From Octopus bimaculoides (taxonomy: Eukaryota), in contig NC_068982.1 in assembly GCF_001194135.2 (NCBI RefSeq), positions 184,213,192 through 184,277,191 of the forward strand: a DNA stretch of 64,000 nucleotides, read 5' to 3'. Positions 334 through 34,649 of the stretch are shown here, in pieces; the stretch's first letter is position 1; each line of letters starts with the position of its first letter. The notes under the pieces were generated by a model that was not told where the DNA came from, did no database searches, and saw only the letters and a program-made list of their open reading frames with translations. A program made the translations under genes and the position numbers.

Positions 334-1640
334 TATGTCAAGACCATTAAGATTGAAATGTCCGATTTTGAATTGAAACTTTTACTTTATCTCAACAAAA
401 AACAATGCAGTTAATTAAAGTATGCGCTTAAATTATCAACACAATTTTACCATTTTATCGGTAGCTTATTTATACCGGCAGCGAAGAATTCTGGAGAGCA
501 GATGGTAATGAAATCACGAAAGGCTGTTTTTTGCATCATCTTCAGATTTGAAGATTTTTCCCTGCAAAAAGTTGTCTAATGCCTGGAAAACGTAACAGTC
601 AGTTGGTGAAAGTTCTGGTGAATACGGTGGATGACAGAGTACTTCCAAGTTCAGTTTTTGTAACTCGAGTAGCATTCTTTGGGCAACATGTGGTCGAGCA
701 TTGTCTTGCATGTCTCTATTGACCAATCTCAGCTGTTTAATTGCAAGTTCGCTCATCGTTTCATCCAATTCGTTGATGTATACATCCGCTGTATACATCC
801 GCTGTATACATCCGCTGTATACATCCGCTGTATACATAATAAAGCTGTAGCGGATGACACCAGCGCTGGACCACCAAACAGACACTATTAGCTATTTTTG
901 GTGAACATTGTTTTTTTGGATTGTGTTTTGGCACTTCGTCTCTATCCAACCACCGTGCAGAATGCTTGCTATTGTTGAAAAGAATCCATTTTTCATCGCA
1001 CGTAACAATACGATGCAAAAATAGTTCGCTTTTATGCTGTGACAGTAAAGAACAGCAAGTTTCAAGATGACGTGTCATTTGATGCTCGTTCAGTTCGTAT
1101 GGTACCCACTTGTCCAGCTTCTTTACCTTGCCGATTTGTTTCAAATGGTCCAATACAGTTGGAATCGAAACATCAAACCTTACTGTTAACTCACGTGTAG
1201 TATGAGATGTATCCGCTTCCACTACAGTTTCCAGCTCATCATTATCCACTTTGGTCCCAGGTCTACCATGGGGCTGATTTACAAGAGTAAAGTCACCAGA
1301 CCGGAACATCTCAGACTATCGACGTACAGTGTGCTCATTCGCCACATCTTCACCAAATACCTCATTGGTGTTTCGAGCTGTTGTGATGCATTGATTCCAC
1401 GACGGAACTCACATTCATAAACAACACGAATTTTTTTATCTATCCATAAGTTCACAGAAATTTATTTACAAGAGAAAACTCACAATATAATCAGACACCA
1501 AGAATTGTATTTCAAAAAGTGATGTTATAACTCTTCAATATTGTAAAACAAAAAACTGTCAGGATAAAATATTAGAGTTAACTACTGTCAAACTTGGTGC
1601 ATAAGAAAATTGGACATTTCATTCTTAATGACCTGATATA
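334..1640 (-). mobile_element. Full-length but dead mariner (DD34D) DNA transposon, about 1.3 kb
   Basis: Transposase start at 1447. Motifs WVPYEL, TCDEKW, DNARPH and HPPYSPELSPTD with exactly 34 residues between the last two Asp; frameshifts and stops. Imperfect TIRs at about 336-369 (TCAAGACCATTAAGATTGAAATGTCCGATTTT) and 1606-1638 (reverse complement TATCAGGTCATTAAGAATGAAATGTCCAATTTT). Confidence 0.9.
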
Positions 1641-4460: not shown

Positions 4461-5758
4461 AGACACCCAGTTGTCATCAGCTCTGTCCACTTCGCATATG
4501 TAAGTACCACAGTGAGGTATAGTAAACTGTTGTAAAAAGTGGTACAGATTAATGAAATCAACCTTTTGTTAGGTAATGGTGTGAAAACTAAAGAGATGCT
4601 AAAATTATTCTGGACTCACAATTATATCCAAGTGTGAAGTTGTTAGTCACAGTGATTGTGTATACACGTAAGTATAGTTTCACAGTATCCATAGTCTATG
4701 CTCATGTTTTAGATTGCTAAGTTGATAATAGCGACTATAACGCTGTTAGTTCATATCACATAACCAGTACGGACCTGGATCAACGGTCATGACACTGGTG
4801 GCTTAGTATAGTTTGCTGTAAATATTTAGTTTGCTGTGCATCAGGGACCGTTCAATACACAATCTTTTGTGATGTAGTGTTACCTGTACTGTATCAATGA
4901 CCAGCGGTAAAGCCTTCATCCTTTGTCGTCTTCTCCGCAGGGTTGGCCGTGTAATCCGGATGCTGACGAACCAGCTCCCAAAGATAGTACTCTTCGGCTG
5001 CTAGAATGAAAAACAATTGTCAGCTCGAAACTGTGAGCGTAAAGGGATATTACTAAATACTTTAATGCTCTCTCCCATTTTCTATCATGGGTGACATTCA
5101 TGTCATTATTAAGACGGTTTCAGTCGGGATTACATTTCTTGATACATTTCTGGGGAATTAACGTTCCCCCAAAATTTAGCCCGATGTATCAAGATCCCCA
5201 CAAAATATAAAGTATGAATCTACCCCTAAAATATAAAGTGCCAATGTACTTTATAACCTGCAAATATAAGACGTGTATGCAACCNNNNNNNNNNNNNNNN
5301 NNNNNNNNNNNNNNNNNNNNNNNNNNNNNNNNNNNNNNNNNNNNNNNNNNNNNNNNNNNNNNNNNNNNNNNNNNNNNNNNNNNNNNNNNNNNNNNNNNNN
5401 NNNNNNNNNNNNNNNNNNNNNNNNNNNNNNNNNNNNNNNNNNNNNNNNNNNNNNNNNNNNNNNNTATATATATATATATATATACATTGCAAGGTGTTAA
5501 TTTATAAACAAAAATTCATTTGCAAGACAATAAAACATTTGAGAAAATACTTTTTCGGGAATTTATTCCAAAATATCCATTATTAAACATTTTATTAGTT
5601 TATTAACATATATCTCCTCACTTGTACATAAATAAATCTACTCGCTTATTTCAATATTCATTATTATCATCATAAAATCATTAGTAGCAATAATAATTAT
5701 AAAGGTTGCATTAATTGTTATTTTTTAAATTAGTAGTTGCAGTACTTGTACCATTCTT

Positions 5759-6406
5759 TTACAATCGATGGAGAGTTGAAAGAGCGTTCTTCCATATATA
5801 TTGGTTAAACTTGGCACCGGATATATATATTACTGTCATCATAGGCCACATGGACAAAAAGAAGAGCAAGCGAGAATTGAATTTAAATGAGTCGAGAAAT
5901 AGATAGACCCAAGAGCCAGTGTTTGTCCTCAGAAACAAAACAGTTGTCTGATAGGAAGTTGTAATCATGACAATTCCAATGAGATGAGCCAGGACCTGGA
6001 AATAAGGATGGTAAACCAGGAATTTCTCAATGAGAACCATAAAGAGAGGAAGAGAATGTATTATGTGGTTGTTAACATCTCTTAACAGGTCAATAATAAA
6101 TTCAGTGTCCATAAAAAATATACTCCAGAAGATCACGGAGACAAAGATGCCCATTGGGAAGACGATCGAATTGAAGTAGTGCGTCAGGATTTCTCGGAAG
6201 ATTCTGTGGTTTGATTTCAACGAAAGGATAATATCATAGACTAAACTCAATAAGAAGAAAAGCCACAATATCCATTGATTCCATAAACTCAATACATTTA
6301 AGTTATGCGTGATAATATACCAATTGTGCCATTTATTCTTCAGTATTCCATACGTCAGCACAAAAAAACAAGTTGAGTGAAATAATAGACGAACCTTTAA
6401 TGCCAT
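5759..6406 (-). CDS. AIG1-like: AIG1/ADTRP (FAR-17a) family membrane hydrolase, copy 1 (215 aa, single exon, Ser at the nucleophile position)
   Basis: Uninterrupted hydrophobic ORF. Family motifs recognisable against human AIG1/ADTRP: N-terminal L-x-F-H, NVLS-LWN (AIG1 KFLT-FID), FPMGIFV..FW..F.D (AIG1 FPVGVFV..FW..Y.D), NHIIH-SLP..VLIE (AIG1 NHGMH-TTV..ILIE), GSWVYLFLD (AIG1 GMWVYPFLE) and C-terminal G...NQYIW. Ser40 codon AGT at 6289-6287; His117 codon CAT at 6058-6056. Confidence 0.9.
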   Translation of the reverse strand: MALKVRLLFHSTCFFVLTYGILKNKWHNWYIITHNLNVLSLWNQWILWLFFLLSLVYDIILSLKSNHRIFREILTHYFNSIVFPMGIFVSVIFWSIFFMDTEFIIDLLRDVNNHIIHSLPLFMVLIEKFLVYHPYFQVLAHLIGIVMITTSYQTTVLFLRTNTGSWVYLFLDSFKFNSRLLFFLSMWPMMTVIYISGAKFNQYIWKNALSTLHRL

Positions 6407-6850
6407 TTCCGTAACGTATCAATTGCTTTATCCAAACTGTTCACTAGATAATGTTCTTTTGAATTAATATACGAGCAATTAGTGTTTTACACAATATATA
6501 TATATAAATACTTTTTCTTTTTTGTATGTAAGTGCTTCTGTAACGTAATTTTCTAGCTATCATAAATAACAGGAACCAGATGAAGTAAGAAGATTCAAAG
6601 TAAAAAACTGATAGACATAATATCTTTTTATCAGTTGATTTCTTTGTCGATTTGTTTTCTTTTATCTATTTTAGGCTCGATTCTTCTTGGCTTTATATTT
6701 TAGTGTAACTTCTATTTCAACCTCATTTTTCTCTTCGCCATTTTCATTTGATCCAAGTTCTAACGCAGAGTCACGAAGCTCTGATATATCGACTACTGGT
6801 GACGTCATAAAAGACACCTACTTTAGAAAGTCACTTGATTCGTGACGTTA
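6407..6850 (-). promoter_or_regulatory. Conserved upstream module of AIG1-like copy 1
   Basis: TGACGTCA at 6800-6807, second TGACGT at 6843-6848, CGCCATTTT (YY1-like) near 6736-6744, TAACGTAA at 6541-6548. Alignable to the upstream regions of copies 2 and 3. Confidence 0.6.
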
Positions 6851-7444
6851 TAATTTAGATATAGATATCAATAGATAAATGTTTTCGTCTGTTTTCTTCT
6901 CTTTCGAAAATTTTCAAATAAATAATCGCATTCTTTTTTACGATCGTTTATTTTTATTTATATATTTATATATATAGTTTTAATATAAAATGTCGGTACT
7001 TCTTTTCTGGGGTCCTGTGAAAAAGAAATTATTGACTGAAGTAGGTGGTTTTCAGATAGAAAAATGAAATGCTTCTTCTGTGTCAAAAAAGCGAAAGTGT
7101 TTTTTTTCCCTTCCAAAAAGCGAAAGTGTCTTTGATAGGGAGACGTGAAAGTGTTTTTATGAACTATAATTTTAATGTTTTCTGTGATACACGTCCAATA
7201 TTACATGAACTCGATGATTTGAAGAAGAGATAGTTTGCCTTGGGAAATGTGTTGGCAAAGACAATTTCTTACAACTTCTCCGAACTTTACATCCTCATCA
7301 AAACCAGGTCAAAACAAATGCGACAATGAAGGCTGTAATTTTACTGATATGAATCTGTTTCATATCACATGGCCACGTGACCGACCAGACTATCACATAA
7401 TGACGCCACCTCGCTGGTTAGGTGAGCAGGCTAACACACCCCCT

Positions 7445-7582
7445 TGAACGAAAGGAGACTGGAACAACGTGAAATGAAATGTTTTGCTCATGGAAACGAC
7501 GCGCCGTCCGGTCTGAGAATCGAACCCACGATCTTGCCATCATGTGTGCAACAGCCTAACTACTAGATCATGCACCTTCACT
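7445..7582 (-). mobile_element. tRNA-derived SINE (family B-related short form)
   Basis: Reverse complement shows a B-box (GGTTCGATTCTC) and the body CATTTCATTTCACGTTGTTCCAGT shared with 36558-36800 and 61390-61532. Confidence 0.65.
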
Positions 7583-8647
7583 GTCTCGTATATTTACTGT
7601 TAATTGTTTACACTCTTTTCTTCTACTAATATTCAATACACATGAGTAATAAATAACTTTGCTCTCGACATTAACTAAGAACGAATCTAACTTTAATGAC
7701 ATCACCACGCTGGATGCGAGCTGCCACTAGTTTCATTTTGAAAACAACTGACTTTTGAAAAACTATCTTATTTTTAACAGTGCAAGCGTAATATCGTAAC
7801 GAAACATTTCTCACGATAGCCTTGAGAACTCACGTGGTTGCGAAAGAAATTAACCGCCCAGTCACACTTGTGTTAAAAGACACATCTTTCATGTAAATTT
7901 TAAATATATTAATACATATTGGCAGATCATGTACCCTCATTTTCTTTTGCTTTCTGGGGAAAATTTCTTTATGATGCTGAAAAAAAAGACGCTTGCCCAT
8001 GGTCCCACACAGTGGGATTGAAGTCGGAACCAGTTGGTTGGGAAATGTACGTACGTACGTACGTATGTATGTATGTATGTATGTATGTATGTATGTATGT
8101 ATGTATGTATGTATGTATGCATGTATGTATGTATGGATGTATGGATGGATGTATGCATGCATGCATGTATACATGCATGTATGCATGTATGTATGTATAT
8201 ATGTATGTATATATGTATGTATGTATGCATGAATGTATGCATGCATGTATGCATGTATGTATGTATATATGTATGTATATATGTATGTTCCGGATTAAGG
8301 TCCCTAAGAGAGAAAATAATTTACAAGACGATTCATAATTTTTGAAATCATTTTCAGGGCATTTATTCCTAAATAAGAAATCAACATTCTGTCAGTTTGT
8401 ATTACTTCACTTACAAAGACCATGAGCACAGCACTTTCTTCCGGCTTAAACTGTGTAAAAGAGACAAAAACAAATGTATCTACATACAACTGTTGCCCGT
8501 TTACCTCAATACACTTCTTTCTCCTCATCATCATCAGCATCAACATCATGATGATCAATGATGATGATGATGATGATGATAAATAATAGCACGGATTGTA
8601 TTATTGCATTTAAGATAGTAGCAGCAGTACTTGTAATTAATGTTAAT

Positions 8648-9304
8648 TTACGATTGAGTCAAGCTTGAAAGAGCGTTCTTCCATATTAATTCATTGATTT
8701 TGGCACCGGATATATATACTGCTGCAATCATAGGCCACATAGATAAAAAGAAGAACAAGCGAGAATTGAACTTGGATGAATCGAAGACTAGATAGGCCCA
8801 AGAGACAGTATTTGTTCTCAAAAATAAAACTGTTGCTTGGTAGGCGGCTGTAATAACAACGATTCCGATGAGGTGAACTACAATTTGGAAATAAGGATGG
8901 TAGACTAGAAATTTCTCAATGAGAACTAAAATGAAAGGAAAGCAGTGTATGATGGGGTTATTCACGTCTGAGAACAGTGCCATTGCAATTTCTCTGTCGA
9001 TCAAAGATATAAGCCAGAAGGTGACGAAATCAAAGGAGCCTATTGAGAAGACGATTGAATTGAAGTAGTGTGTGAGGAGCTGTCGGAAAATCCTTTGGTT
9101 AGACCTTAACAAAAGGATAATATCGTAAAGAACGCTCAATCCGAAGAAACTCCACATAATCCATAAATTCCATTTCGTCAATATATTCAAGTTGTGCAAG
9201 ATTCCAAAGTACTTCTTCCCTTTCATCAGATGCAATGCAAACATCAACATTACGACAGAGATGATGTGAAAAACTAGACGAATCACTAACGACATTTTGC
9301 TCAT
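8648..9304 (-). CDS. AIG1-like: AIG1/ADTRP family membrane hydrolase, copy 2 (218 aa, single exon, most divergent)
   Basis: Colinear without gaps to copy 1 (130/215 identical by manual count). Thr43 (ACG, 9178-9176) and His120 (CAC, 8947-8945) retained; DRE motif as in AIG1. Met4 aligns with the start of the other copies. Confidence 0.88.
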   Translation of the reverse strand: MSKMSLVIRLVFHIISVVMLMFALHLMKGKKYFGILHNLNILTKWNLWIMWSFFGLSVLYDIILLLRSNQRIFRQLLTHYFNSIVFSIGSFDFVTFWLISLIDREIAMALFSDVNNPIIHCFPFILVLIEKFLVYHPYFQIVVHLIGIVVITAAYQATVLFLRTNTVSWAYLVFDSSKFNSRLFFFLSMWPMIAAVYISGAKINELIWKNALSSLTQS

Positions 9305-9730
9305 GTATCGATTGCTTATCCAAACTGTTCTCTAATAAATAATGTTCTGAATTGACACTTCAATAATTATTGTCCAACGCAATGTTTAGTTTTTGGTTGT
9401 GGGTGCTTTCTGTTATGTAATTTTCTGTCTATCATAGACAACAGGCAACAAATGAGTGTTAAAATTCAAAGCAAACATGTGATAGACATAAAACGTGTGG
9501 TCGTTGTACTTCCCTCTTTTTATTACATGGTGTCCTAGGCATTTCTTTTATTCCTTTCCCTTTTAGATTCAGACCTCCGGGGGGTTTGTGTCTTTTAATA
9601 AAACTTTATTTTCACCATTTTCATTAGATTCAAGTTTCAATACAATGTAGCGAAAGTTTGAGATGTCGACTACTGGTGACGTCATAGAAGACACACTTTT
9701 TGGAAATTCACCTGATTCATGACGTTGTCT
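9305..9730 (-). promoter_or_regulatory. Conserved upstream module of AIG1-like copy 2
   Basis: TGACGTCA at 9677-9684, TGACGT at 9720-9725, TTATGTAA (D-box consensus) at 9413-9420, CACCATTTTCATT near 9613. Confidence 0.6.
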
Positions 9731-9848
9731 TTAACTTTTAAACGAACTTAAGTATTGCGGTGGGTGGGTGGTGGAGGTGGTGGTGGTGGTGGTGGGGAAT
9801 ATAAATTCTGAAAATGAAATAAAAACTGCGGTGATCTACTAATGAAAA

Positions 9849-9885
<37 letters not shown>

Positions 9886-10729
9886 CATGCATGCGTAAGC
9901 ATGTGTGGGTGCGTGTTGTACATAGACACATACAATTCAAGTTAGCCAACATGTCAAAACTTCATCAGTTTTATGTTAAACATCCCTAACAGTCCACGTC
10001 TTTTACTTTTGACCCACCACAAACAACTAGGGCCTAGCTACTAGACGAATGACAGAACCCATCCATTTAAGTATATCCATCCACCTTTCTCGTACAATAA
10101 AGCTCAGTGGTCCAAGTGCCCCATGTGATTCATTCATAATCACTACAGCAGTTTAGGAATAAAACAAAGCTTACAACGCCCGAAGAAACTCATTTATTCC
10201 TGCAAACTGCATCGCATTCATCCAGCAAGACGTCTCTTGCAAGACAACTTCTTGTAAAAAATATCTTCGTGTACCCCTCAAAATGTCCCTGTCCCCAAGC
10301 TACATCTGATCTTGCTTGTCTTCAGCTTCACAGGCGATCCTTTTTATCTCAGAAAGAATTTCCACCAGCTTAACAGAATCCTCTTTTTTTTTTTTTCGCT
10401 TCCCCACAGCCATGGTTATATAAGCAATATCCCTGCAGACAAAGGCTCTACACCTTTGCCCGTTTTCCATTCGACTCCATCTGACTTGGTAAACTTCGTC
10501 CAAATCTACTCTTTGTCATCCCATTAAATTCACCACCTTACATATACATACGTACACCACACACCCATGCACATATCAAGTACAGAAGTACTTCCTCAAA
10601 ATCACTGGCCCTGTCAATATTCCTTCCATTATCCTAAAACGTTGCACTTCATAGCTTCTTCCTATAAGCATTATATTTTTTAATGCTTCACTCGCTATGT
10701 GCTGACCTTAGGAAACATGGTATAGTGTC

Positions 10730-11520
10730 CTATTCCCAAAGTTGTTAGCATGCCGGGAATAGAAAACAATCTCTCTGATTTTGCTATCGTCCTATTGCAT
10801 TAGAGTCAAGTACTAACATCAACATTGTTCAGCATCTTGAATCTTCCTCTTCCTCCCCTCCTTCTTTTTAATGGCCATTAATGCAGCATCCGTAGAACCA
10901 GATTCACTGAAGCCTTACTCACCTATGTTATACACCAGTAGGTTCTCGAATTTAAAGAAATTTGGTGAAAGCAATGTCATCTTTGATATCAGCAAAACTT
11001 TCGGCTATGTCTGATATGCAAATTTCTTACCGAAACTTCCAGCTTACGAATTACATCCATCTTTCATTTCTTGGGCTGGTAGCTTCCTATCAAGTCGCTC
11101 TATGTCACAATATGCTGACAGAACTCTTTCTATCCTCCACTTTTAGTTTTGGTGTACGCTAGGGTTCAGTTTTGTCACTACACTCTTTCTTCTCTACATT
11201 AATGACCAACATTCCATCACTTTTAAAGGCACGTACTCTTACACAAGTGATATTACACTTAATTCCACTCTAATCTCCCCAATCGCGCATCACCCCTGTA
11301 GGAGCAAGTTAATATTGTCTCTTCCAACAGTAAAAAAAAAAACGAATCCATGATATCAAGTAAACATCACTACCCTACACACCTCTTAAACATAAACATC
11401 CGGATAACTGAAGAGATGTTAGCGTGTGTTCCCACCCCGGCATCCGAAACTCGGAGTTTTATCATGGCTACCGAGCAAGTGTCATATATTTTTAGAGATA
11501 AATTCCTCTATTTACATAAT
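10730..11520 (+). mobile_element. CR1/Jockey-like LINE reverse transcriptase relic
   Basis: YRPIAL at 10785-10802, DISKTF at 10985-11002, KLPAY, (Q>stop)GSVLS and LFLLYIND near 11160-11206; many lesions. Confidence 0.75.
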
Positions 11521-11658
11521 ATCGAGGTCTCTTTCTTTCTTTTGTTGTCCTTTCTATCAATATATATATATAAAATATATAGTTTTAGGGAAAATAACCA
11601 AGTTTCAAGAACTCATCGATGAAAATCCACTATCACATATAGAAAAATTAACAATTAA

Positions 11659-11792
11659 AAGCACAATAAATGAGTATAATATAAAGCAAAGTAAATATCA
11701 TAAGATAAATATAATATAATATTATATTATATTATATTATATTTATCTTATGATATTTACTTTGCTTTATATTATACGCATTTATTGTGCTT
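11659..11792. repeat. AT-rich near-perfect palindrome (64-bp arms, 1 mismatch, 6-nt loop) abutting an assembly gap
   Basis: 11659-11722 is the reverse complement of 11729-11792 except A11673/G11778. Confidence 0.9.
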
Positions 11793-12572
11793 NNNNNNNN
11801 NNNNNNNNNNNNNNNNNNNNNNNNNNNNNNNNNNNNNNNNNNNNNNNNNNNNNNNNNNNNNNNNNNNNNNNNNNNNNNNNNNNNNNNNNNNNNNNNNNNN
11901 NNNNNNNNNNNNNNNNNNNNNNNNNNNNNNNNNNNNNNNNNNNNNNNNNNNNNNNNNNNNNNNNNNNNNNNNNNNNNNNNNNNNNNNNNNNNNNNNNNNN
12001 NNNNNNNNNNNNNNNNNNNNNNNNNNNNNNNNNNNNNNNNNNNNNNNNNNNNNNNNNNNNNNNNNNNNNNNNNNNNNNNNNNNNNNNNNNNNNNNNNNNN
12101 NNNNNNNNNNNNNNNNNNNNNNNNNNNNNNNNNNNNNNNNNNNNNNNNNNNNNNNNNNNNNNNNNNNNNNNNNNNNNNNNNNNNNNNNNNNNNNNNNNNN
12201 NNNNNNNNNNNNNNNNNNNNNNNNNNNNNNNNNNNNNNNNNNNNNNNNNNNNNNNNNNNNNNNNNNNNNNNNNNNNNNNNNNNNNNNNNNNNNNNNNNNN
12301 NNNNNNNNNNNNNNNNNNNNNNNNNNNNNNNNNNNNNNNNNNNNNNNNNNNNNNNNNNNNNNNNNNNNNNNNNNNNNNNNNNNNNNNNNNNNNNNNNNNN
12401 NNNNNNNNNNNNNNNNNNNNNNNNNNNNNNNNNNNNNNNNNNNNNNNNNNNNNNNNNNNNNNNNNNNNNNNNNNNNNNNNNNNNNNNNNNNNNNNNNNNN
12501 NNNNNNNNNNNNNNNNNNNNNNNNNNNNNNNNNNNNNNNNNNNNNNNNNNNNNNNNNNNNNNNNNNNNNNNN

Positions 12573-12617
<45 letters not shown>

Positions 12618-12974
12618 CCACTCAGGCGTTTAAATATCAATGTACCCTTGAAATATTTTATAATGTAAACTCAAAGGTGTATACATACGAAAAAAATGCA
12701 CTCATGAAAAAAAATTAATCTGTATGACAATGATATCTTCAAAGTATTCCAAAGTATTCCAAAAATATTTTCAAAGTATTTATTTCAAAACGACAATCAA
12801 GCAGTTTATTAGTTTATTTTTCTTTCCTGACATATGCCTTGGTCACAGCCCCTGCATACGCACCAAAATCATTAAAACAACAACAACAACAACAACAAAT
12901 GTACCTATACACGCCTGTTTCCATTTTATTTCATTCATCATCATCATCATCAATAAGTAATTAATAAATACATA

Positions 12975-13016
<42 letters not shown>

Positions 13017-13017
<1 letters not shown>

Positions 13018-13224
13018 GTTTCAAAGTTTGGCACAAAGCTAGCAATTTTGGGAGATAGGTTAAGTCTATTATGTTGACCCCAGTGCTCAACTGGTGCTTA
13101 TTTTATCCACTCCGGAAGGCTGAAAGGCAAAGTCGACCTCGACGGAATTTGAACTCAGAACGTAAAGATGGATGGAATGCCACTAAGCAATTTGCCCGAC
13201 GTGCTAACGACTGTGCCAGTCCAC
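13017..13224 (-). mobile_element. SINE family A copy, just downstream of AIG1-like copy 3
   Basis: Reverse complement of the 61121-61350 consensus (GGAATTTGAACTCAGAACG, AAAGGCAAAGTCGACCTCG); tail runs into (AAT)n. Confidence 0.8.
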
Positions 13225-13232
13225 TAGATTAC

Positions 13233-13276
<44 letters not shown>

Positions 13277-13343
13277 TAATAATAATAGAGATTGCATTAG
13301 TTATTACATGTGAATAAGAAGTTGTGTCACTTGTAACATTCTT

Positions 13344-13991
13344 TTACGATCGATGGAAATTTGCAAGAGCGCTCTTCCATATCATATCGTTAATTTTGGC
13401 GCCGGATATATATACTGCTGTGATCATAGGCAACATAGAGAAAAAGAAGAAGAAGCGAGAATTGAACTTATATGAATCGAGGAATAGATAAACCCAAGAG
13501 GTAGTGTTTGTCCTCAGAAACAGAACAGTTGATTGATAGGACGCTGTGATAAAGATAATTCCAATAATGTGAGACATAACATTAAAATATGGATGGTAAA
13601 CCAGGTATTTCTCAATGAGGACCATAACGAAGGGAAGACAGTGTATGATATGGTTATTAACGTCTGTGAACAGTACGATAACATGATCATCGTCGATGAA
13701 ATATATACTCCAGAAGATTAAGAAAACGAAGGTTCCCATTGGAAAGACGATCGAATTGAAGTAGTGCGTCAAGAATTCCCGGAATGTTCTTTCTTTAGAC
13801 TTCATCGAAAGTATAATATCATAAATTAAGCTTAACAGGAAGAAAATTCCTAAAAGCCATTGATTCCATATTGTTAAAACATTCAAGTTGTGTAAGATTC
13901 CAAGAAAGCTATTCCATTTATTTTTCAGTATTGTATACGTCAGCATTAAAATACAAGTAGTGTGAAATAACAGACGAATCATTAACGCCAT
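13344..13991 (-). CDS. AIG1-like: AIG1/ADTRP family membrane hydrolase, copy 3 (215 aa, single exon)
   Basis: Colinear without gaps to copy 1 (150/215 identical by manual count). Thr40 (ACA, 13874-13872) and His117 (CAC, 13643-13641) retained. A-rich context before the ATG. Confidence 0.9.
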   Translation of the reverse strand: MALMIRLLFHTTCILMLTYTILKNKWNSFLGILHNLNVLTIWNQWLLGIFFLLSLIYDIILSMKSKERTFREFLTHYFNSIVFPMGTFVFLIFWSIYFIDDDHVIVLFTDVNNHIIHCLPFVMVLIEKYLVYHPYFNVMSHIIGIIFITASYQSTVLFLRTNTTSWVYLFLDSYKFNSRFFFFFSMLPMITAVYISGAKINDMIWKSALANFHRS

Positions 13992-14410
13992 TTTTTTTCA
14001 AGTATCAAGCAAACTGTTCGTTAAATAATGTTCTTCTGAACTGATATACAAACAATTAGTTTCATTCAATACATATATAATTTCTGTTTGTTACGTAATT
14101 TTCTATTTTCTAGCAAAAGTAGATAACAGGAAACCGCTATTAAGATCCAAAGCAGGAAAAGGCAATAGATATAAATTGTACTTTTCTCCTTTTTATCAGT
14201 TATTTAAATTTCTTTCTTCTTTTATTTTACTCTTTTCGGTCTAAATTCTTCTTGGCTTCGCGTGGTTTAATGAAACTTCTGTTTCAACCGCATTCCTGCC
14301 GTCGCCATTTTCATTAGATCAACTTCTACTACAGTGTCACGAAGATTTGAAATGCTGACTTCTGATGACGTCATAGAATACATCCATTTTTTAAAGTCAC
14401 CTGAACAGTA
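13992..14410 (-). promoter_or_regulatory. Conserved upstream module of AIG1-like copy 3
   Basis: ATGACGTCAT palindrome at 14365-14374, TTACGTAA at 14091-14098, CGCCATTTT near 14303-14311. Confidence 0.6.
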
Positions 14411-14452
14411 TGCTGTTATTAACGTTTGAGCAAAATTGGTGCATTCATTTCT

Positions 14453-29110: not shown

Positions 29111-29192
29111 CACCAATCCATTTCCTTAAACTCACTCATATCCCAGTCATTGACTCGGAAGTGACGTCATCGATGACGGTATTATATATAGA
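29111..29192 (+). promoter_or_regulatory. Orphan promoter-like cluster: CCAAT, ETS-CRE composite, half-CRE, TATA
   Basis: CCAAT at 29113-29117, CGGAAGTGACGTCA at 29156-29169, TGACG at 29174-29178, TATATATAG at 29183-29191. Confidence 0.35.
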
Positions 29193-33238: not shown

Positions 33239-34098
33239 CACACACACATATAGAGAGGGAGGTTGTTTCTTATGGCCAGTCAGAGAGTGACCATAGGTTT
33301 CGCACCTATAAAGCTTTTAGCTGAATAGGCGACGCATCAGACTCGTAGACTAAAGGTACATAACTTCTCTATAACTGGAAGAAGGAACAAATATTGGTCA
33401 GTTAAGGTTGTAAATAAAAAATTCCGGAACTAAATTCTATTGAGAATAAATCTGGGTGAGGTAGATTTAACCTTCTAAACAATTACTTTTCCCTAGACGG
33501 CAAACAGGGAATTCCATGCTTTTAACATGAATTTCCTCTGATGAAGGCACCGATTAAACATCGCTTTTTTAGGGTTTAAGAAGGCCCCCGAAGCAAGCGA
33601 GTTTTTCAGGATTCTTGCTCTCTCGGTCAAGCAAAGTTTATATCGTTTGCTCTCGTTGAGGTACAGTCTTGGTTGTTTTAAGAGCCTTCCTTTAATAATG
33701 CCTGGTGTACCTTCGTCTTTTGAATGCCATACGCAGCTGACCAGGGATTTGATGTCGCGCCTCTCTGACCAAGACGTGTTCCTTCCTCCAGTTGTGGGAG
33801 GATTATGTGCCCCCGGCTAAAAAATCTGGTGAATCGCCTATACAACTAAGAGTTTTATAGATGGAAAACCAAAGGTCACTCTAAAACAACCATCTAAGTA
33901 TTACCGCTCTAATGTTTCAAGAATAGTTCTTTCCGGATTTATGAACCATTGACCGATTATATGTGGTGTGAGTGTGTATGTATGTATGTATGTATGTATG
34001 TATGTATGTATGTATGTATGTATGTATGTATGTATATATATATATATATGTATGTATGTATGTATATATATATATATATATACATACACATACATACA

Positions 34099-34134
<36 letters not shown>

Positions 34135-34373
34135 CACTGCTGTGAGTTTGAGGAATTTAAACTTATGTTGAGATAAACACATATATAGGCGGGCAGACAG
34201 AAAGACCGACAGACACATACATATATACATACATTCATACATACTATACATACGTACATAATACATACATACATACATACATACATACATACGTACATAC
34301 ATACATACGTACATACATACGTACATACATACATACATACGTACATACATACATACATACGTACATACATACA

Positions 34374-34406
<33 letters not shown>

Positions 34407-34612
34407 CAATGTACATCTCTTGAGTTTTTTCTGAGGCTCTAAACTTGGTATTCTAATTCTGGATTCTTTTGAACGCTGTCGTAAAATGCTCCACGAAAAT
34501 ATATTTCCATGAATCTTCGAATATATCTGTGTGTGAGTGTGTGTGTGTATGTGTGTGTGTGTATGTGTGTGTGTGAGTGAGTGTGTGTGCGTGTATCTGT
34601 GTATGCATAATG

Positions 34613-34649
<37 letters not shown>

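What the first reader, a model, noticed from the sequence alone, without database searches (positions are those of the whole stretch)
5759..13991. Tandem array of three intronless AIG1/ADTRP-family lipid hydrolase paralogues
Seen: three co-oriented single-exon ORFs within 8.3 kb, colinear without indels, 60-70% identical (130/215 and 150/215 by manual count), all intact in otherwise decayed repeat DNA. Established: human AIG1 (Thr43/His134) and ADTRP (Thr47/His131) are multi-pass membrane Thr-His hydrolases of FAHFA lipids. Inference: this is a lineage-specific expansion kept intact by selection, giving a small set of diversified membrane lipid-ester hydrolases.
Basis: partly seen in the sequence, partly recalled or inferred. 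Interest (0 to 1): 0.75.

Follow-up and report, generated by a model that had tools for sequence, protein, structure and literature searches.

The report
Three tandem intronless AIG1-like membrane genes
Three neighbouring single-exon genes encode intact, transcribed, selectively maintained members of a divergent branch of the AIG1/ADTRP membrane hydrolase family; this is a real but fairly ordinary family expansion, with a shared conserved upstream control element and expression seen in very few samples.

Summary
Three co-oriented ORFs lie on the minus strand: 5759-6406, 8648-9304 and 13344-13991 (215/218/215 aa, 60-70% identical). The assembly gap (11793-12572) is intergenic and touches no ORF or transcript.

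All three score far above the PF04750 (Far-17a_AIG1) cut-off and model as six-helix membrane proteins. All keep the catalytic His. ORF2 and ORF3 keep the nucleophile Thr; ORF1 has Ser.

RNA contigs are colinear with the genome, so no introns. They are deep in one RNA run and absent from the others examined.

Paralogue dN/dS is about 0.3 at dS 0.6-0.75. All three have expressed orthologues in another species (dS 0.16-0.25), so the triplication is old and shared by several related species. ORF1 is far more constrained (omega 0.04).

The trio, with two distant relatives, forms a 100%-bootstrap clade separate from canonical AIG1/ADTRP-like proteins. The clade has a 5-residue deletion beside the catalytic His and a conserved TGACGTCA (CRE-like) element upstream of each gene.

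Hydrolase activity and substrate are inferred only. Verdict: a new member, a divergent subclade, of a known family; modest interest.

The parts
5759..6406 (-). ORF1 CDS, 215 aa, PF04750. Nucleophile position is Ser40 (codon AGT, 6287-6289); catalytic His117 (6056-6058).
   Evidence: 99% identical orthologue P0254 (omega 0.04). Intact with Ser40 kept in organism C.
8648..9304 (-). ORF2 CDS, 218 aa, PF04750. Thr43 (9176-9178); His120 (8945-8947). Pro replaces the first His of the NHxxH motif (8954-8956).
   Evidence: Orthologue P0003 84% identical, omega 0.31. The public gene model P0004 starts at internal Met27.
13344..13991 (-). ORF3 CDS, 215 aa, PF04750. Thr40 (13872-13874); His117 (13641-13643).
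   Evidence: Orthologue P0001 89% identical, omega 0.24.
5608..7300 (-). ORF1 transcript, part shown. One X8 contig of 2,458 nt at depth 384 is colinear with the genome from 5608 to about 8065 (extrapolated past 7300).
   Evidence: The 3' end lies beside the AATAAA cluster at 5604/5596/5567.
8403..9686 (-). ORF2 transcription unit, unspliced. X8 contig 8559-9663 at depth 642; organism B contigs 8403-9686 and 8403-9675.
   Evidence: Zero depth at 9954-10323 in the RNA runs, while DNA-type run X4 stays at about 11.
13259..14400 (-). ORF3 transcription unit, unspliced. X8 contig 13259 to at least 14400 at depth 139; organism B contigs 13294/13300-14194.
6747..6857 (-). Conserved upstream block of ORF1, with TGACGTCA at 6800-6807 (ATG-401) and half-site CGTCA at 6843-6847.
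9624..9734 (-). Conserved upstream block of ORF2, with TGACGTCA at 9677-9684 (ATG-380) and half-site CGTCA at 9720-9724. Most RNA contigs begin here or just downstream.
14313..14423 (-). Conserved upstream block of ORF3, with TGACGTCA at 14366-14373 (ATG-382).
11793..12572 (.). Assembly gap (780 N, length estimated) in the ORF2-ORF3 intergenic space. Not part of any gene.

Best explanation
The region holds three functional, single-exon, tandemly duplicated genes on the minus strand. They encode about 215-aa six-helix membrane proteins of the Far-17a/AIG1 family (PF04750).

They belong to a divergent, taxonomically narrow subclade. It is marked by a 5-residue deletion next to the catalytic His and by the motifs LTHYFNSIVFP, VYHPYF and DSxKFNSR.

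The copies arose by DNA-level tandem duplication of a ~1.2-kb unit comprising the promoter block, 5'UTR, CDS and the start of the 3'UTR. This happened well before the divergence of several related species, and purifying selection has maintained the copies since.

Most likely mechanism (inferred, not shown): like human AIG1 and ADTRP, they are integral-membrane hydrolases that use a Thr (Ser in ORF1) nucleophile at the start of helix 2 and a His at the start of helix 4 to cleave lipid esters. The substrate is unknown.

All three carry a conserved upstream block containing a perfect TGACGTCA palindrome. They are transcribed together at high level in very few samples. This suggests (inference) co-regulation by a bZIP (CREB/ATF/CREM-type) factor in one tissue or state.
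For: SHOWN:
- Family: PF04750 at 59-78 bits against a cut-off of 24.5, over profile positions ~2-205 of 206.
- Fold: the AF2 model from 53 sequences has pLDDT 87.7 and pTM 0.85, with six long helices. This agrees with the six TM segments described for ADTRP (PMC8123165).
- Catalytic His: invariant in 53/53 family members.
- Nucleophile: Thr in 50/53 and Ser in 3/53, the latter including ORF1, a platypus ADTRP and an amphioxus AIG1.
- Transcription: unspliced, colinear RNA contigs at depth 139-642 in run X8, and in several runs of a related organism. Zero of about 36 million sampled raw reads in three other RNA libraries.
- Paralogue selection: dN/dS 0.28-0.33, dS 0.62-0.75.
- Orthologue selection: dS 0.16/0.25/0.21 with omega 0.04/0.31/0.24 for ORF1/2/3.
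- Intactness: ORF1 in organism C has all indels outside the CDS.
- Phylogeny: NJ tree bootstrap is 100 for the subclade, 100 for the trio plus orthologues, and 91 for ORF1+ORF3 as sisters.
- Duplication unit: homology between copies starts ~430 nt 5' of the ATG and stops ~35-100 nt 3' of the stop.
- CRE element: 3 of the 4 TGACGTCA sites in the window sit at ATG-380 to -401 (0.76 expected in the window). The motif recurs upstream of the distant relatives P0005 and P0006, where ~0.005 is expected per region. It is absent upstream of the canonical genes.
Against: - No enzymatic evidence exists. Identity to human AIG1/ADTRP is only 22-28%.
- Several motifs conserved in canonical members are changed: DRELIFP is lost, WVYP becomes WVYL, and 5 residues are deleted just before the catalytic His. 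The active-site environment may therefore differ.
- The distant subclade member P0006 has lost the catalytic His, so catalysis is not universally retained in this clade.
- ORF2 replaces the first His of NHxxH with Pro.
- The CRE's position relative to the transcription start is unresolved. Some contigs include it: L001, the P0006 transcripts, and the 2.4-kb ORF1 contig.
- Run X8 is labelled 'RNA?' (guessed). Its RNA nature is inferred from its coverage pattern.
- The tissue is unknown.
Confidence: 0.75

Rival explanations
1. The proteins are real and under selection, but they are not hydrolases. The divergent clade has been re-purposed as non-catalytic membrane proteins (scaffold, regulator or transporter-like), with the Thr/His pair kept for structural reasons.
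For: Canonical motifs are lost and 5 residues are deleted beside the catalytic His. P0006 lacks the His altogether. The clade evolves fast: P0005 and P0006 are 35% identical, while the canonical proteins from the same two sources are 84% identical. ADTRP was first described through a non-enzymatic role (PMC8123165).
Against: The His is invariant and the nucleophile is Thr or Ser in every copy and orthologue of the trio, despite dS up to 0.75. Thr to Ser is the one substitution that keeps a hydroxyl nucleophile. ORF1, which carries it, is the most constrained copy (omega 0.04).
Confidence: 0.2
2. The copies are recent, species-specific duplicates or an assembly artefact (haplotypes or repeats mis-assembled around the gaps).
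For: The window is a gappy draft with 20 N runs, three of them near the array.
Against: The copies are only 74-79% identical in DNA. Each has its own distinct RNA contig and its own orthologue in other organisms. Paralogue dS of 0.62-0.75 far exceeds orthologue dS of 0.16-0.25.
Confidence: 0.01
3. They are decaying processed pseudogenes (dead retrocopies) that happen still to be open.
For: They are intronless and sit in repeat-rich, gene-poor DNA. No other Pfam domain is found in the window's other long ORFs.
Against: dN/dS is well below 1 on both paralogue and orthologue branches. About 0.04 open frames of this length are expected by chance. Transcription is high and regulated. The promoter block is shared, which indicates DNA-level duplication of a working gene and not independent retropositions.
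Confidence: 0.02
4. The founder of the divergent clade was a retrogene derived from a multi-exon canonical AIG1-like gene, and this explains the lack of introns.
For: All divergent-clade loci seen as genomic DNA are single ORFs (window; P0005 in L006). Vertebrate AIG1 and ADTRP are multi-exon genes (general knowledge, not tested here).
Against: In the one other genome where both types are visible, the canonical-type gene P0161 is also one uninterrupted ORF (L015 10001-10735). Intronlessness is therefore not specific to the divergent clade there. No poly(A) remnant or target-site duplication was sought or seen.
Confidence: 0.3

Closest known systems
Human AIG1 (androgen-induced gene 1 protein), a FAHFA hydrolase with catalytic T43/H134
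   Same: Same Pfam family (PF04750) and the same predicted six-helix membrane architecture. The catalytic His aligns in all three ORFs, and the nucleophile Thr aligns in ORF2 and ORF3. The T43/H134 sequence context is confirmed by the mutagenesis primers in PMC11139994.
   Different: 24-28% identity. Ser replaces Thr in ORF1. Five residues (IPxWL) are missing before NHxxH. The DRELIFP and WVYP motifs are not kept. The ORFs are shorter (215 vs my recalled 238-aa human sequence). They are single-exon and fall in a separate clade. Activity is untested.
Human ADTRP (androgen-dependent TFPI-regulating protein), a FAHFA hydrolase with catalytic T47/H131
   Same: Same family and dyad alignment. The ADTRP sequence I wrote out from memory matched 11 residue positions and the length given in PMC8123165.
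   Different: 22-24% identity, with the same motif and indel differences as for AIG1. No evidence of any link to TFPI or to androgen regulation.
Invertebrate 'AIG-L' genes (PMC8394805)
   Same: That paper reports phylum-specific diversification and tandem duplication of AIG-family genes outside vertebrates. It states that the AIG1/ADTRP/AIG-L classification does not transfer to other phyla. The present array fits that pattern.
   Different: That study held no molluscs. The clade here is much more divergent than the canonical AIG-L type found in the same kind of samples (P0007/P0161: about 98 bits against the trio profile, versus 209 and 156 for P0005 and P0006).
Canonical AIG1-like proteins P0007 / P0161 (unnamed, from transcript and genome assemblies that also hold divergent-clade members)
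   Same: PF04750. Co-occur with divergent-clade members in the same samples or assembly. P0161 is also a single ORF.
   Different: They keep the IPAWLNHIMH, DRELIFP and WVYP motifs and are 84% identical to each other. There is no TGACGTCA upstream. They are 27-31% identical to the trio.
AIG1-domain GTPases / GIMAPs (avrRpt2-induced gene 1; e.g. PMC7053062 in a snail)
   Same: Only the name 'AIG1'.
   Different: An unrelated soluble GTPase family. Listed here because literature searches for 'AIG1' in molluscs return it.

Membership tests
Far-17a/AIG1 family (Pfam PF04750) | Full-length match to the family HMM above the gathering threshold | tested here: met
   77.5, 59.2 and 70.6 bits against a cut-off of 24.5; profile positions 2-10 to 205 of 206.
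Far-17a/AIG1 family (Pfam PF04750) | Multi-pass (six-helix) integral membrane architecture | tested here: met
   AF2 model with pLDDT 87.7 and pTM 0.85; six long helices at 2-28, 35-62, 68-99, 112-130, 138-162 and 176-214. This is a prediction only. No solved homologue exists in the PDB.
AIG1/ADTRP-type Thr-His hydrolases | Nucleophile Thr (hAIG1 T43 / hADTRP T47) | tested here: inconclusive
   Thr in ORF2 (T43) and ORF3 (T40). ORF1 has Ser40 (AGT), conserved in its orthologues. Ser also occurs in 2 other family members out of 53. Whether Ser supports catalysis in this fold was not tested here.
AIG1/ADTRP-type Thr-His hydrolases | Catalytic His (hAIG1 H134 / hADTRP H131) | tested here: met
   H117/H120/H117; invariant in 53/53 aligned members.
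AIG1/ADTRP-type Thr-His hydrolases | Fluorophosphonate-probe reactivity and FAHFA hydrolysis | not testable with these tools
   Requires expression, ABPP and lipid assays.
Vertebrate AIG1 or ADTRP orthogroups | Groups with vertebrate AIG1 or ADTRP in a phylogeny | tested here: not met
   The trio, P0005 and P0006 form a separate 100%-bootstrap clade outside all canonical sequences, including human AIG1 and ADTRP. NJ tree only.
Processed retrogene | Intronless copy of an intron-containing parent, with poly(A) remnant or target-site duplications | tested here: inconclusive
   Intronless: yes. However, the canonical relative P0161 is also a single ORF in another genome. The copies share promoter sequence, which indicates DNA-level duplication. 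Poly(A) remnants and TSDs were not examined.
CRE (cAMP-response-element)-regulated promoters | Conserved TGACGTCA close to the transcription start, bound by CREB/ATF/CREM | tested here: inconclusive
   The motif is perfectly conserved in all three copies and recurs in distant relatives. Most RNA contig 5' ends fall 0-45 nt downstream of it, but some contigs include it. Factor binding is not testable here.

The most novel reading that the evidence does not exclude
A fast-evolving, taxonomically narrow clade of AIG1-like membrane hydrolases has been recruited to a single tissue or physiological state under a conserved dual-CRE promoter. Its active-site region is remodelled (5-residue deletion beside the His). 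One paralogue (ORF1) is fixed as a natural Ser-nucleophile enzyme under very strong constraint (omega 0.04). On this reading it is a small enzyme set with a new lipid-ester substrate range, not FAHFA housekeeping.
Probability: 0.2. Interest if true: 0.5.

Novelty: new member of a known kind. Interest (0 to 1): 0.3.

Why it matters
AIG1 and ADTRP are the only known Thr-nucleophile integral-membrane lipid hydrolases. No structure is solved, and almost nothing is known about them outside vertebrates.

This array offers three things:
- A compact natural experiment. Three paralogues differ in nucleophile (Thr or Ser), in the NHxxH motif (His or Pro) and in constraint (omega 0.04 to 0.31). A related protein has lost the His altogether.
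- A clade-defining deletion next to the catalytic His, which may inform how substrates reach the active site.
- A simple, conserved candidate regulatory element tied to expression that is either strongly on or undetectable in the runs examined.

It is useful material for enzymologists and for studies of gene-family evolution. It does not overturn anything. Automated annotation would already label these genes AIG1-like, and the proteins already sit unnamed in UniRef.

Tried and rejected
- Further copies in the window: none found by tblastn or blastn.
- Other genes in the window: ten other long ORFs have no Pfam domain. The 219-aa frame at 33957-34616 is microsatellite-encoded. Rfam finds nothing in the window.
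- First AF2 run on 5 close sequences: unusable, pLDDT 45.7. Replaced by the 53-sequence run.
- PDB by sequence: nothing for the single protein. The family profile weakly hits TMC-1 (7usw_A, E = 7e-5). Foldseek on the good model gives only generic helical-bundle/GPCR matches at E > 0.4 and TM ~0.3, and no TMC match. I treat the TMC-1 hit as transmembrane composition bias.
It was done gene by gene instead.
- Exact-sequence look-up of ORF1's contig found nothing, so the array could not be extended beyond the window's left edge.
- I briefly suspected P0001 and P0003 were extra paralogues, because ORF1's counterpart in the same study is 99% identical. I rejected this: the dS values are comparable (0.16-0.25) and the UTRs align full-length. 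The difference lies in dN.
- Identifying the host organism and the expressing tissue failed. Names are coded, and the accession search in papers found nothing.
- No paper links this family to cephalopods or molluscs.


Full report
OBSERVATION. The window (64 kb, 37% G+C, 20 runs of N) holds three long ORFs on the minus strand at 5759-6406, 8648-9304 and 13344-13991, of 215, 218 and 215 aa. tblastn and blastn with each ORF find these three copies and no fourth, not even a decayed one. The proteins are 70% (ORF1/ORF3) and 60% (ORF2 against either) identical. They are colinear without internal indels, and ORF2 has only three extra N-terminal residues. With a stop frequency of 0.067 per codon, about 0.04 open frames of this length are expected in the whole window. 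The only other frame as long (33957-34616) is microsatellite-encoded low complexity.

THE GAP. The flagged gap (11793-12572) was tested first. It lies in the ORF2-ORF3 intergenic space, 2,489 nt 5' of the ORF2 start and 772 nt 3' of the ORF3 stop, outside every ORF and RNA contig. No frame depends on it. It leaves open only the true ORF2-ORF3 spacing and whether another ~1.2-kb unit hides inside it.

FAMILY AND FOLD. All three ORFs match Pfam PF04750 (Far-17a_AIG1) at 77.5, 59.2 and 70.6 bits against a gathering cut-off of 24.5, over essentially the whole profile. A first AlphaFold run on five close sequences was useless (pLDDT 45.7). With a 53-sequence family alignment the ORF3 model reached pLDDT 87.7 and pTM 0.85. 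It shows six long helices, matching the six transmembrane segments described for ADTRP (PMC8123165). No member of the family has a solved structure:
- phmmer finds nothing in the PDB.
- Foldseek returns only generic helical bundles at E > 0.4.
- A weak profile hit to TMC-1 (E = 7e-5) is not backed by fold and is probably compositional.

CATALYTIC RESIDUES. The literature gives T43/H134 (AIG1) and T47/H131 (ADTRP) as the residues required for FAHFA hydrolysis (PMC8123165; PMC11139994). I wrote out the human sequences from memory. ADTRP then matched 11 residue positions and the length given in PMC8123165. The AIG1 T43 and H134 contexts match the mutagenesis primers in PMC11139994. In the alignment:
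- The His corresponds to H117/H120/H117 of ORF1/2/3. It is invariant in 53 of 53 family members.
- The nucleophile is Thr in ORF2 (T43) and ORF3 (T40), but Ser in ORF1 (S40, codon AGT at 6287-6289).
- Ser40 is not an error. It is kept in ORF1's counterparts in two other organisms. Ser also occurs at this position in a platypus ADTRP and an amphioxus AIG1.
- ORF2 replaces the first His of the NHxxH motif with Pro.
- Identity to the human enzymes is only 22-28%.

A DIVERGENT CLADE. A HMMER profile search of 1.84 billion representative proteins found 273 relatives. Only two were close: P0005 (209 bits) and P0006 (156 bits). Scores then dropped to about 98 bits for ordinary AIG1-like proteins. An NJ tree gives the following bootstrap supports:
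- 100% for the clade of the trio, its orthologues, P0005 and the P0006 group, placed outside all canonical sequences including human AIG1 and ADTRP.
- 100% for the trio with its orthologues as a monophyletic group.
- 91% for ORF1 and ORF3 as sisters.

The clade is marked by a 5-residue deletion (canonical IPxWL) directly before NHxxH. It has its own motifs (LTHYFNSIVFP, VYHPYF, DSxKFNSR) and has lost the canonical DRELIFP and WVYP. P0006 has lost the catalytic His. Canonical proteins from the two other source datasets are 84% identical, while P0005 and P0006 are 35% identical. The divergent clade therefore either evolves much faster or already contains old paralogues. This fits the report that invertebrate AIG-family genes diversify phylum by phylum and do not map onto vertebrate AIG1/ADTRP/AIG-L (PMC8394805). 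That study included no molluscs, and I found no paper on this family in cephalopods or molluscs. The mollusc 'AIG1' papers concern unrelated GTPases.

TRANSCRIPTION AND GENE STRUCTURE. One run of the same organism (X8) holds all three genes as contigs colinear with the genome, with no splice joints:
- ORF1: 5608 to about 8065, depth 384.
- ORF2: 8559-9663, depth 642.
- ORF3: 13259 to beyond 14400, depth 139.

X8 is labelled 'RNA?'. I treat it as RNA because its coverage drops to zero in the intergenic DNA (for example 9954-10323), where a DNA-type run stays at about 11. Runs of a related organism B carry contigs about 96.5% identical to ORF2 and about 97% identical to ORF3, with the same boundaries (8403-9686; 13300-14194). 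The genes are therefore single-exon units of about 1.1-1.3 kb. ORF1's 3' end lies at an AATAAA cluster.

Expression is either strongly on or undetectable. Eight other RNA runs of the organism hold none of the ORF2 words in the index. Raw reads from three RNA libraries (about 36 million sampled) give zero reads on ORF1 and ORF2. The tissue could not be identified because sample names are coded.

SELECTION AND AGE. Between paralogues, dN/dS is 0.28-0.33 at dS 0.62-0.75. Transcripts from another species (runs SRR118693xx) provide one orthologue for each copy. They align over CDS and UTRs:

| Copy | dS | omega |
|---|---|---|
| ORF1 | 0.16 | 0.04 |
| ORF2 | 0.25 | 0.31 |
| ORF3 | 0.21 | 0.24 |

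(All.) In organism C, ORF1 differs by 10 substitutions (3 amino-acid changes), and all indels fall outside the CDS. The triplication is therefore roughly three times older than that species split. It is shared by several related species, and all copies remain under purifying selection. The Ser-nucleophile copy ORF1 is the most constrained. The expansion is clade-specific, not species-specific.

HOW THE ARRAY AROSE. Similarity between copies begins abruptly about 430 nt upstream of each ATG and fades 35-100 nt after each stop. A ~1.2-kb unit including promoter-proximal sequence was thus duplicated at the DNA level. A retrogene founder is possible but not supported. In the one other genome where both types are visible as genomic DNA (ENA ERZ21867824), the divergent P0005 and the canonical P0161 are both single uninterrupted ORFs.

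SHARED UPSTREAM ELEMENT (new here).
- The best-conserved non-coding stretch is a ~110-nt block 340-420 nt upstream of each ATG. It is 71-74% identical between paralogues, against 52-59% for the rest of the 5' region and unalignable sequence beyond it.
- The block contains a perfect TGACGTCA palindrome in all three copies (6800-6807, 9677-9684, 14366-14373). These are three of only four occurrences in 64 kb, where 0.76 are expected.
- In ORF1 and ORF2 a CGTCA half-site lies 40 nt further upstream.
- The same palindrome recurs, in unalignable sequence, upstream of P0005 (-189, half-site at -224) and twice upstream of P0006 (-164, -130). About 0.005 is expected per region.
- It is absent upstream of the canonical genes.
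- Most RNA contig 5' ends for ORF2 and its orthologue fall 0-45 nt downstream of the motif. Some contigs include it, so its position relative to the start site is unresolved.

TGACGTCA is the consensus cAMP-response element (general knowledge). The inference, untested, is that a bZIP factor of the CREB/ATF/CREM type drives the restricted co-expression.

MECHANISM AND CONFIDENCE. It is shown that these are intact, transcribed, selectively maintained PF04750 genes with the family's His, and with a hydroxyl nucleophile at the right position in a six-helix membrane fold. It is inferred that they are integral-membrane Thr/Ser-His hydrolases of lipid esters, about 0.6 likely. FAHFAs as the specific substrate are less likely, given the remodelled region beside the His. 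The main rival, at about 0.2, is that the clade has lost catalysis, as P0006 apparently has. Pseudogenes and assembly artefacts are effectively excluded.

VERDICT.
- The genes are on the minus strand.
- ORF1 has Ser, not Thr, at the nucleophile position.
- The genes form a separate divergent clade and are not AIG1 or ADTRP orthologues.
- The expansion is old and shared among related species.
- The enzymatic function is inferred, not shown.

It is a new member (a divergent subclade) of a known family, of modest interest. The proteins already exist as unnamed entries in UniRef.

Noticed in passing
window 6800-6807, 9677-9684, 14366-14373; L006 ~9812; L012 140 and 174; L001 174: A perfect TGACGTCA palindrome, usually with a second CRE or half-site 34-40 bp away, lies upstream of every divergent-clade gene, including distant relatives. 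It is absent upstream of canonical AIG1-like genes. This is a candidate conserved regulatory module.
   Followed up: yes
window 29162-29169: The fourth TGACGTCA in the window, not next to any recognisable ORF.
   Followed up: no
window ~12870-13330: A very high-copy repeat sits directly 3' of ORF3. Contig depths reach 10^5-10^6 in DNA-type runs, and it is abundant in RNA runs of several organisms. It looks SINE-like. Rfam (gathering threshold) finds no tRNA or other family there.
   Followed up: partly
window 9732-9953 and 8474-8621: High-copy simple repeats flank the ORF2 unit: a TG-rich repeat 5' of it and an ATC/ATG trinucleotide repeat in its 3'UTR. They produce many spurious 'joints' when reads are laid.
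   Followed up: no
window 5608-~8065: The X8 contig covering ORF1 runs about 1.66 kb upstream of its ATG, into the microsatellite at 7830-8340. ORF2's 3' contig reaches down to about 8259. This suggests either read-through from ORF2 into ORF1 or a distal ORF1 start site.
   Followed up: partly
L015 10001-10735 (ENA ERZ21867824 ctg97557l): The canonical-type AIG1-like gene P0161 is also a single uninterrupted ORF, in the same assembly that holds the divergent P0005. Intronlessness is therefore not peculiar to the divergent clade there.
   Followed up: partly
P0006 (L011-L014): This distant member of the divergent clade has Val in place of the catalytic His and a further deletion in that loop, yet it is transcribed in several samples. 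It may be a natural non-catalytic member.
   Followed up: partly
ORF1 vs ORF2/ORF3 orthologue pairs (L016, L001, L004): Protein-level constraint differs about 6-8 fold between neighbouring paralogues: omega is 0.04 for the Ser-nucleophile ORF1 and 0.24-0.31 for the others, at similar dS.
   Followed up: yes
window 761-1309 (-): This 182-aa ORF contains '...RIVTCDEKWILF...', which from memory resembles mariner-type transposase sequence. Pfam gave no hit at E <= 0.01.
   Followed up: partly
window 5600-6900, runs X14/X15: The word index says these organism-B RNA runs hold 45-49% of the ORF1-region words. Laying their contigs at >=85% likeness placed none. Unexplained tool discrepancy.
   Followed up: no
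profile A3 vs PDB 7usw_A: The family profile hits TMC-1 residues 270-445 at E = 7e-5. Foldseek on the good model does not support it. Probably transmembrane composition bias.
   Followed up: partly
window 8648-9304 / P0004: The public gene model for ORF2 (P0004, 192 aa) starts at internal Met27. This drops most of helix 1, whereas the orthologue P0003 and the RNA contigs support the full 218-aa ORF. Probably a mis-annotated start.
   Followed up: partly
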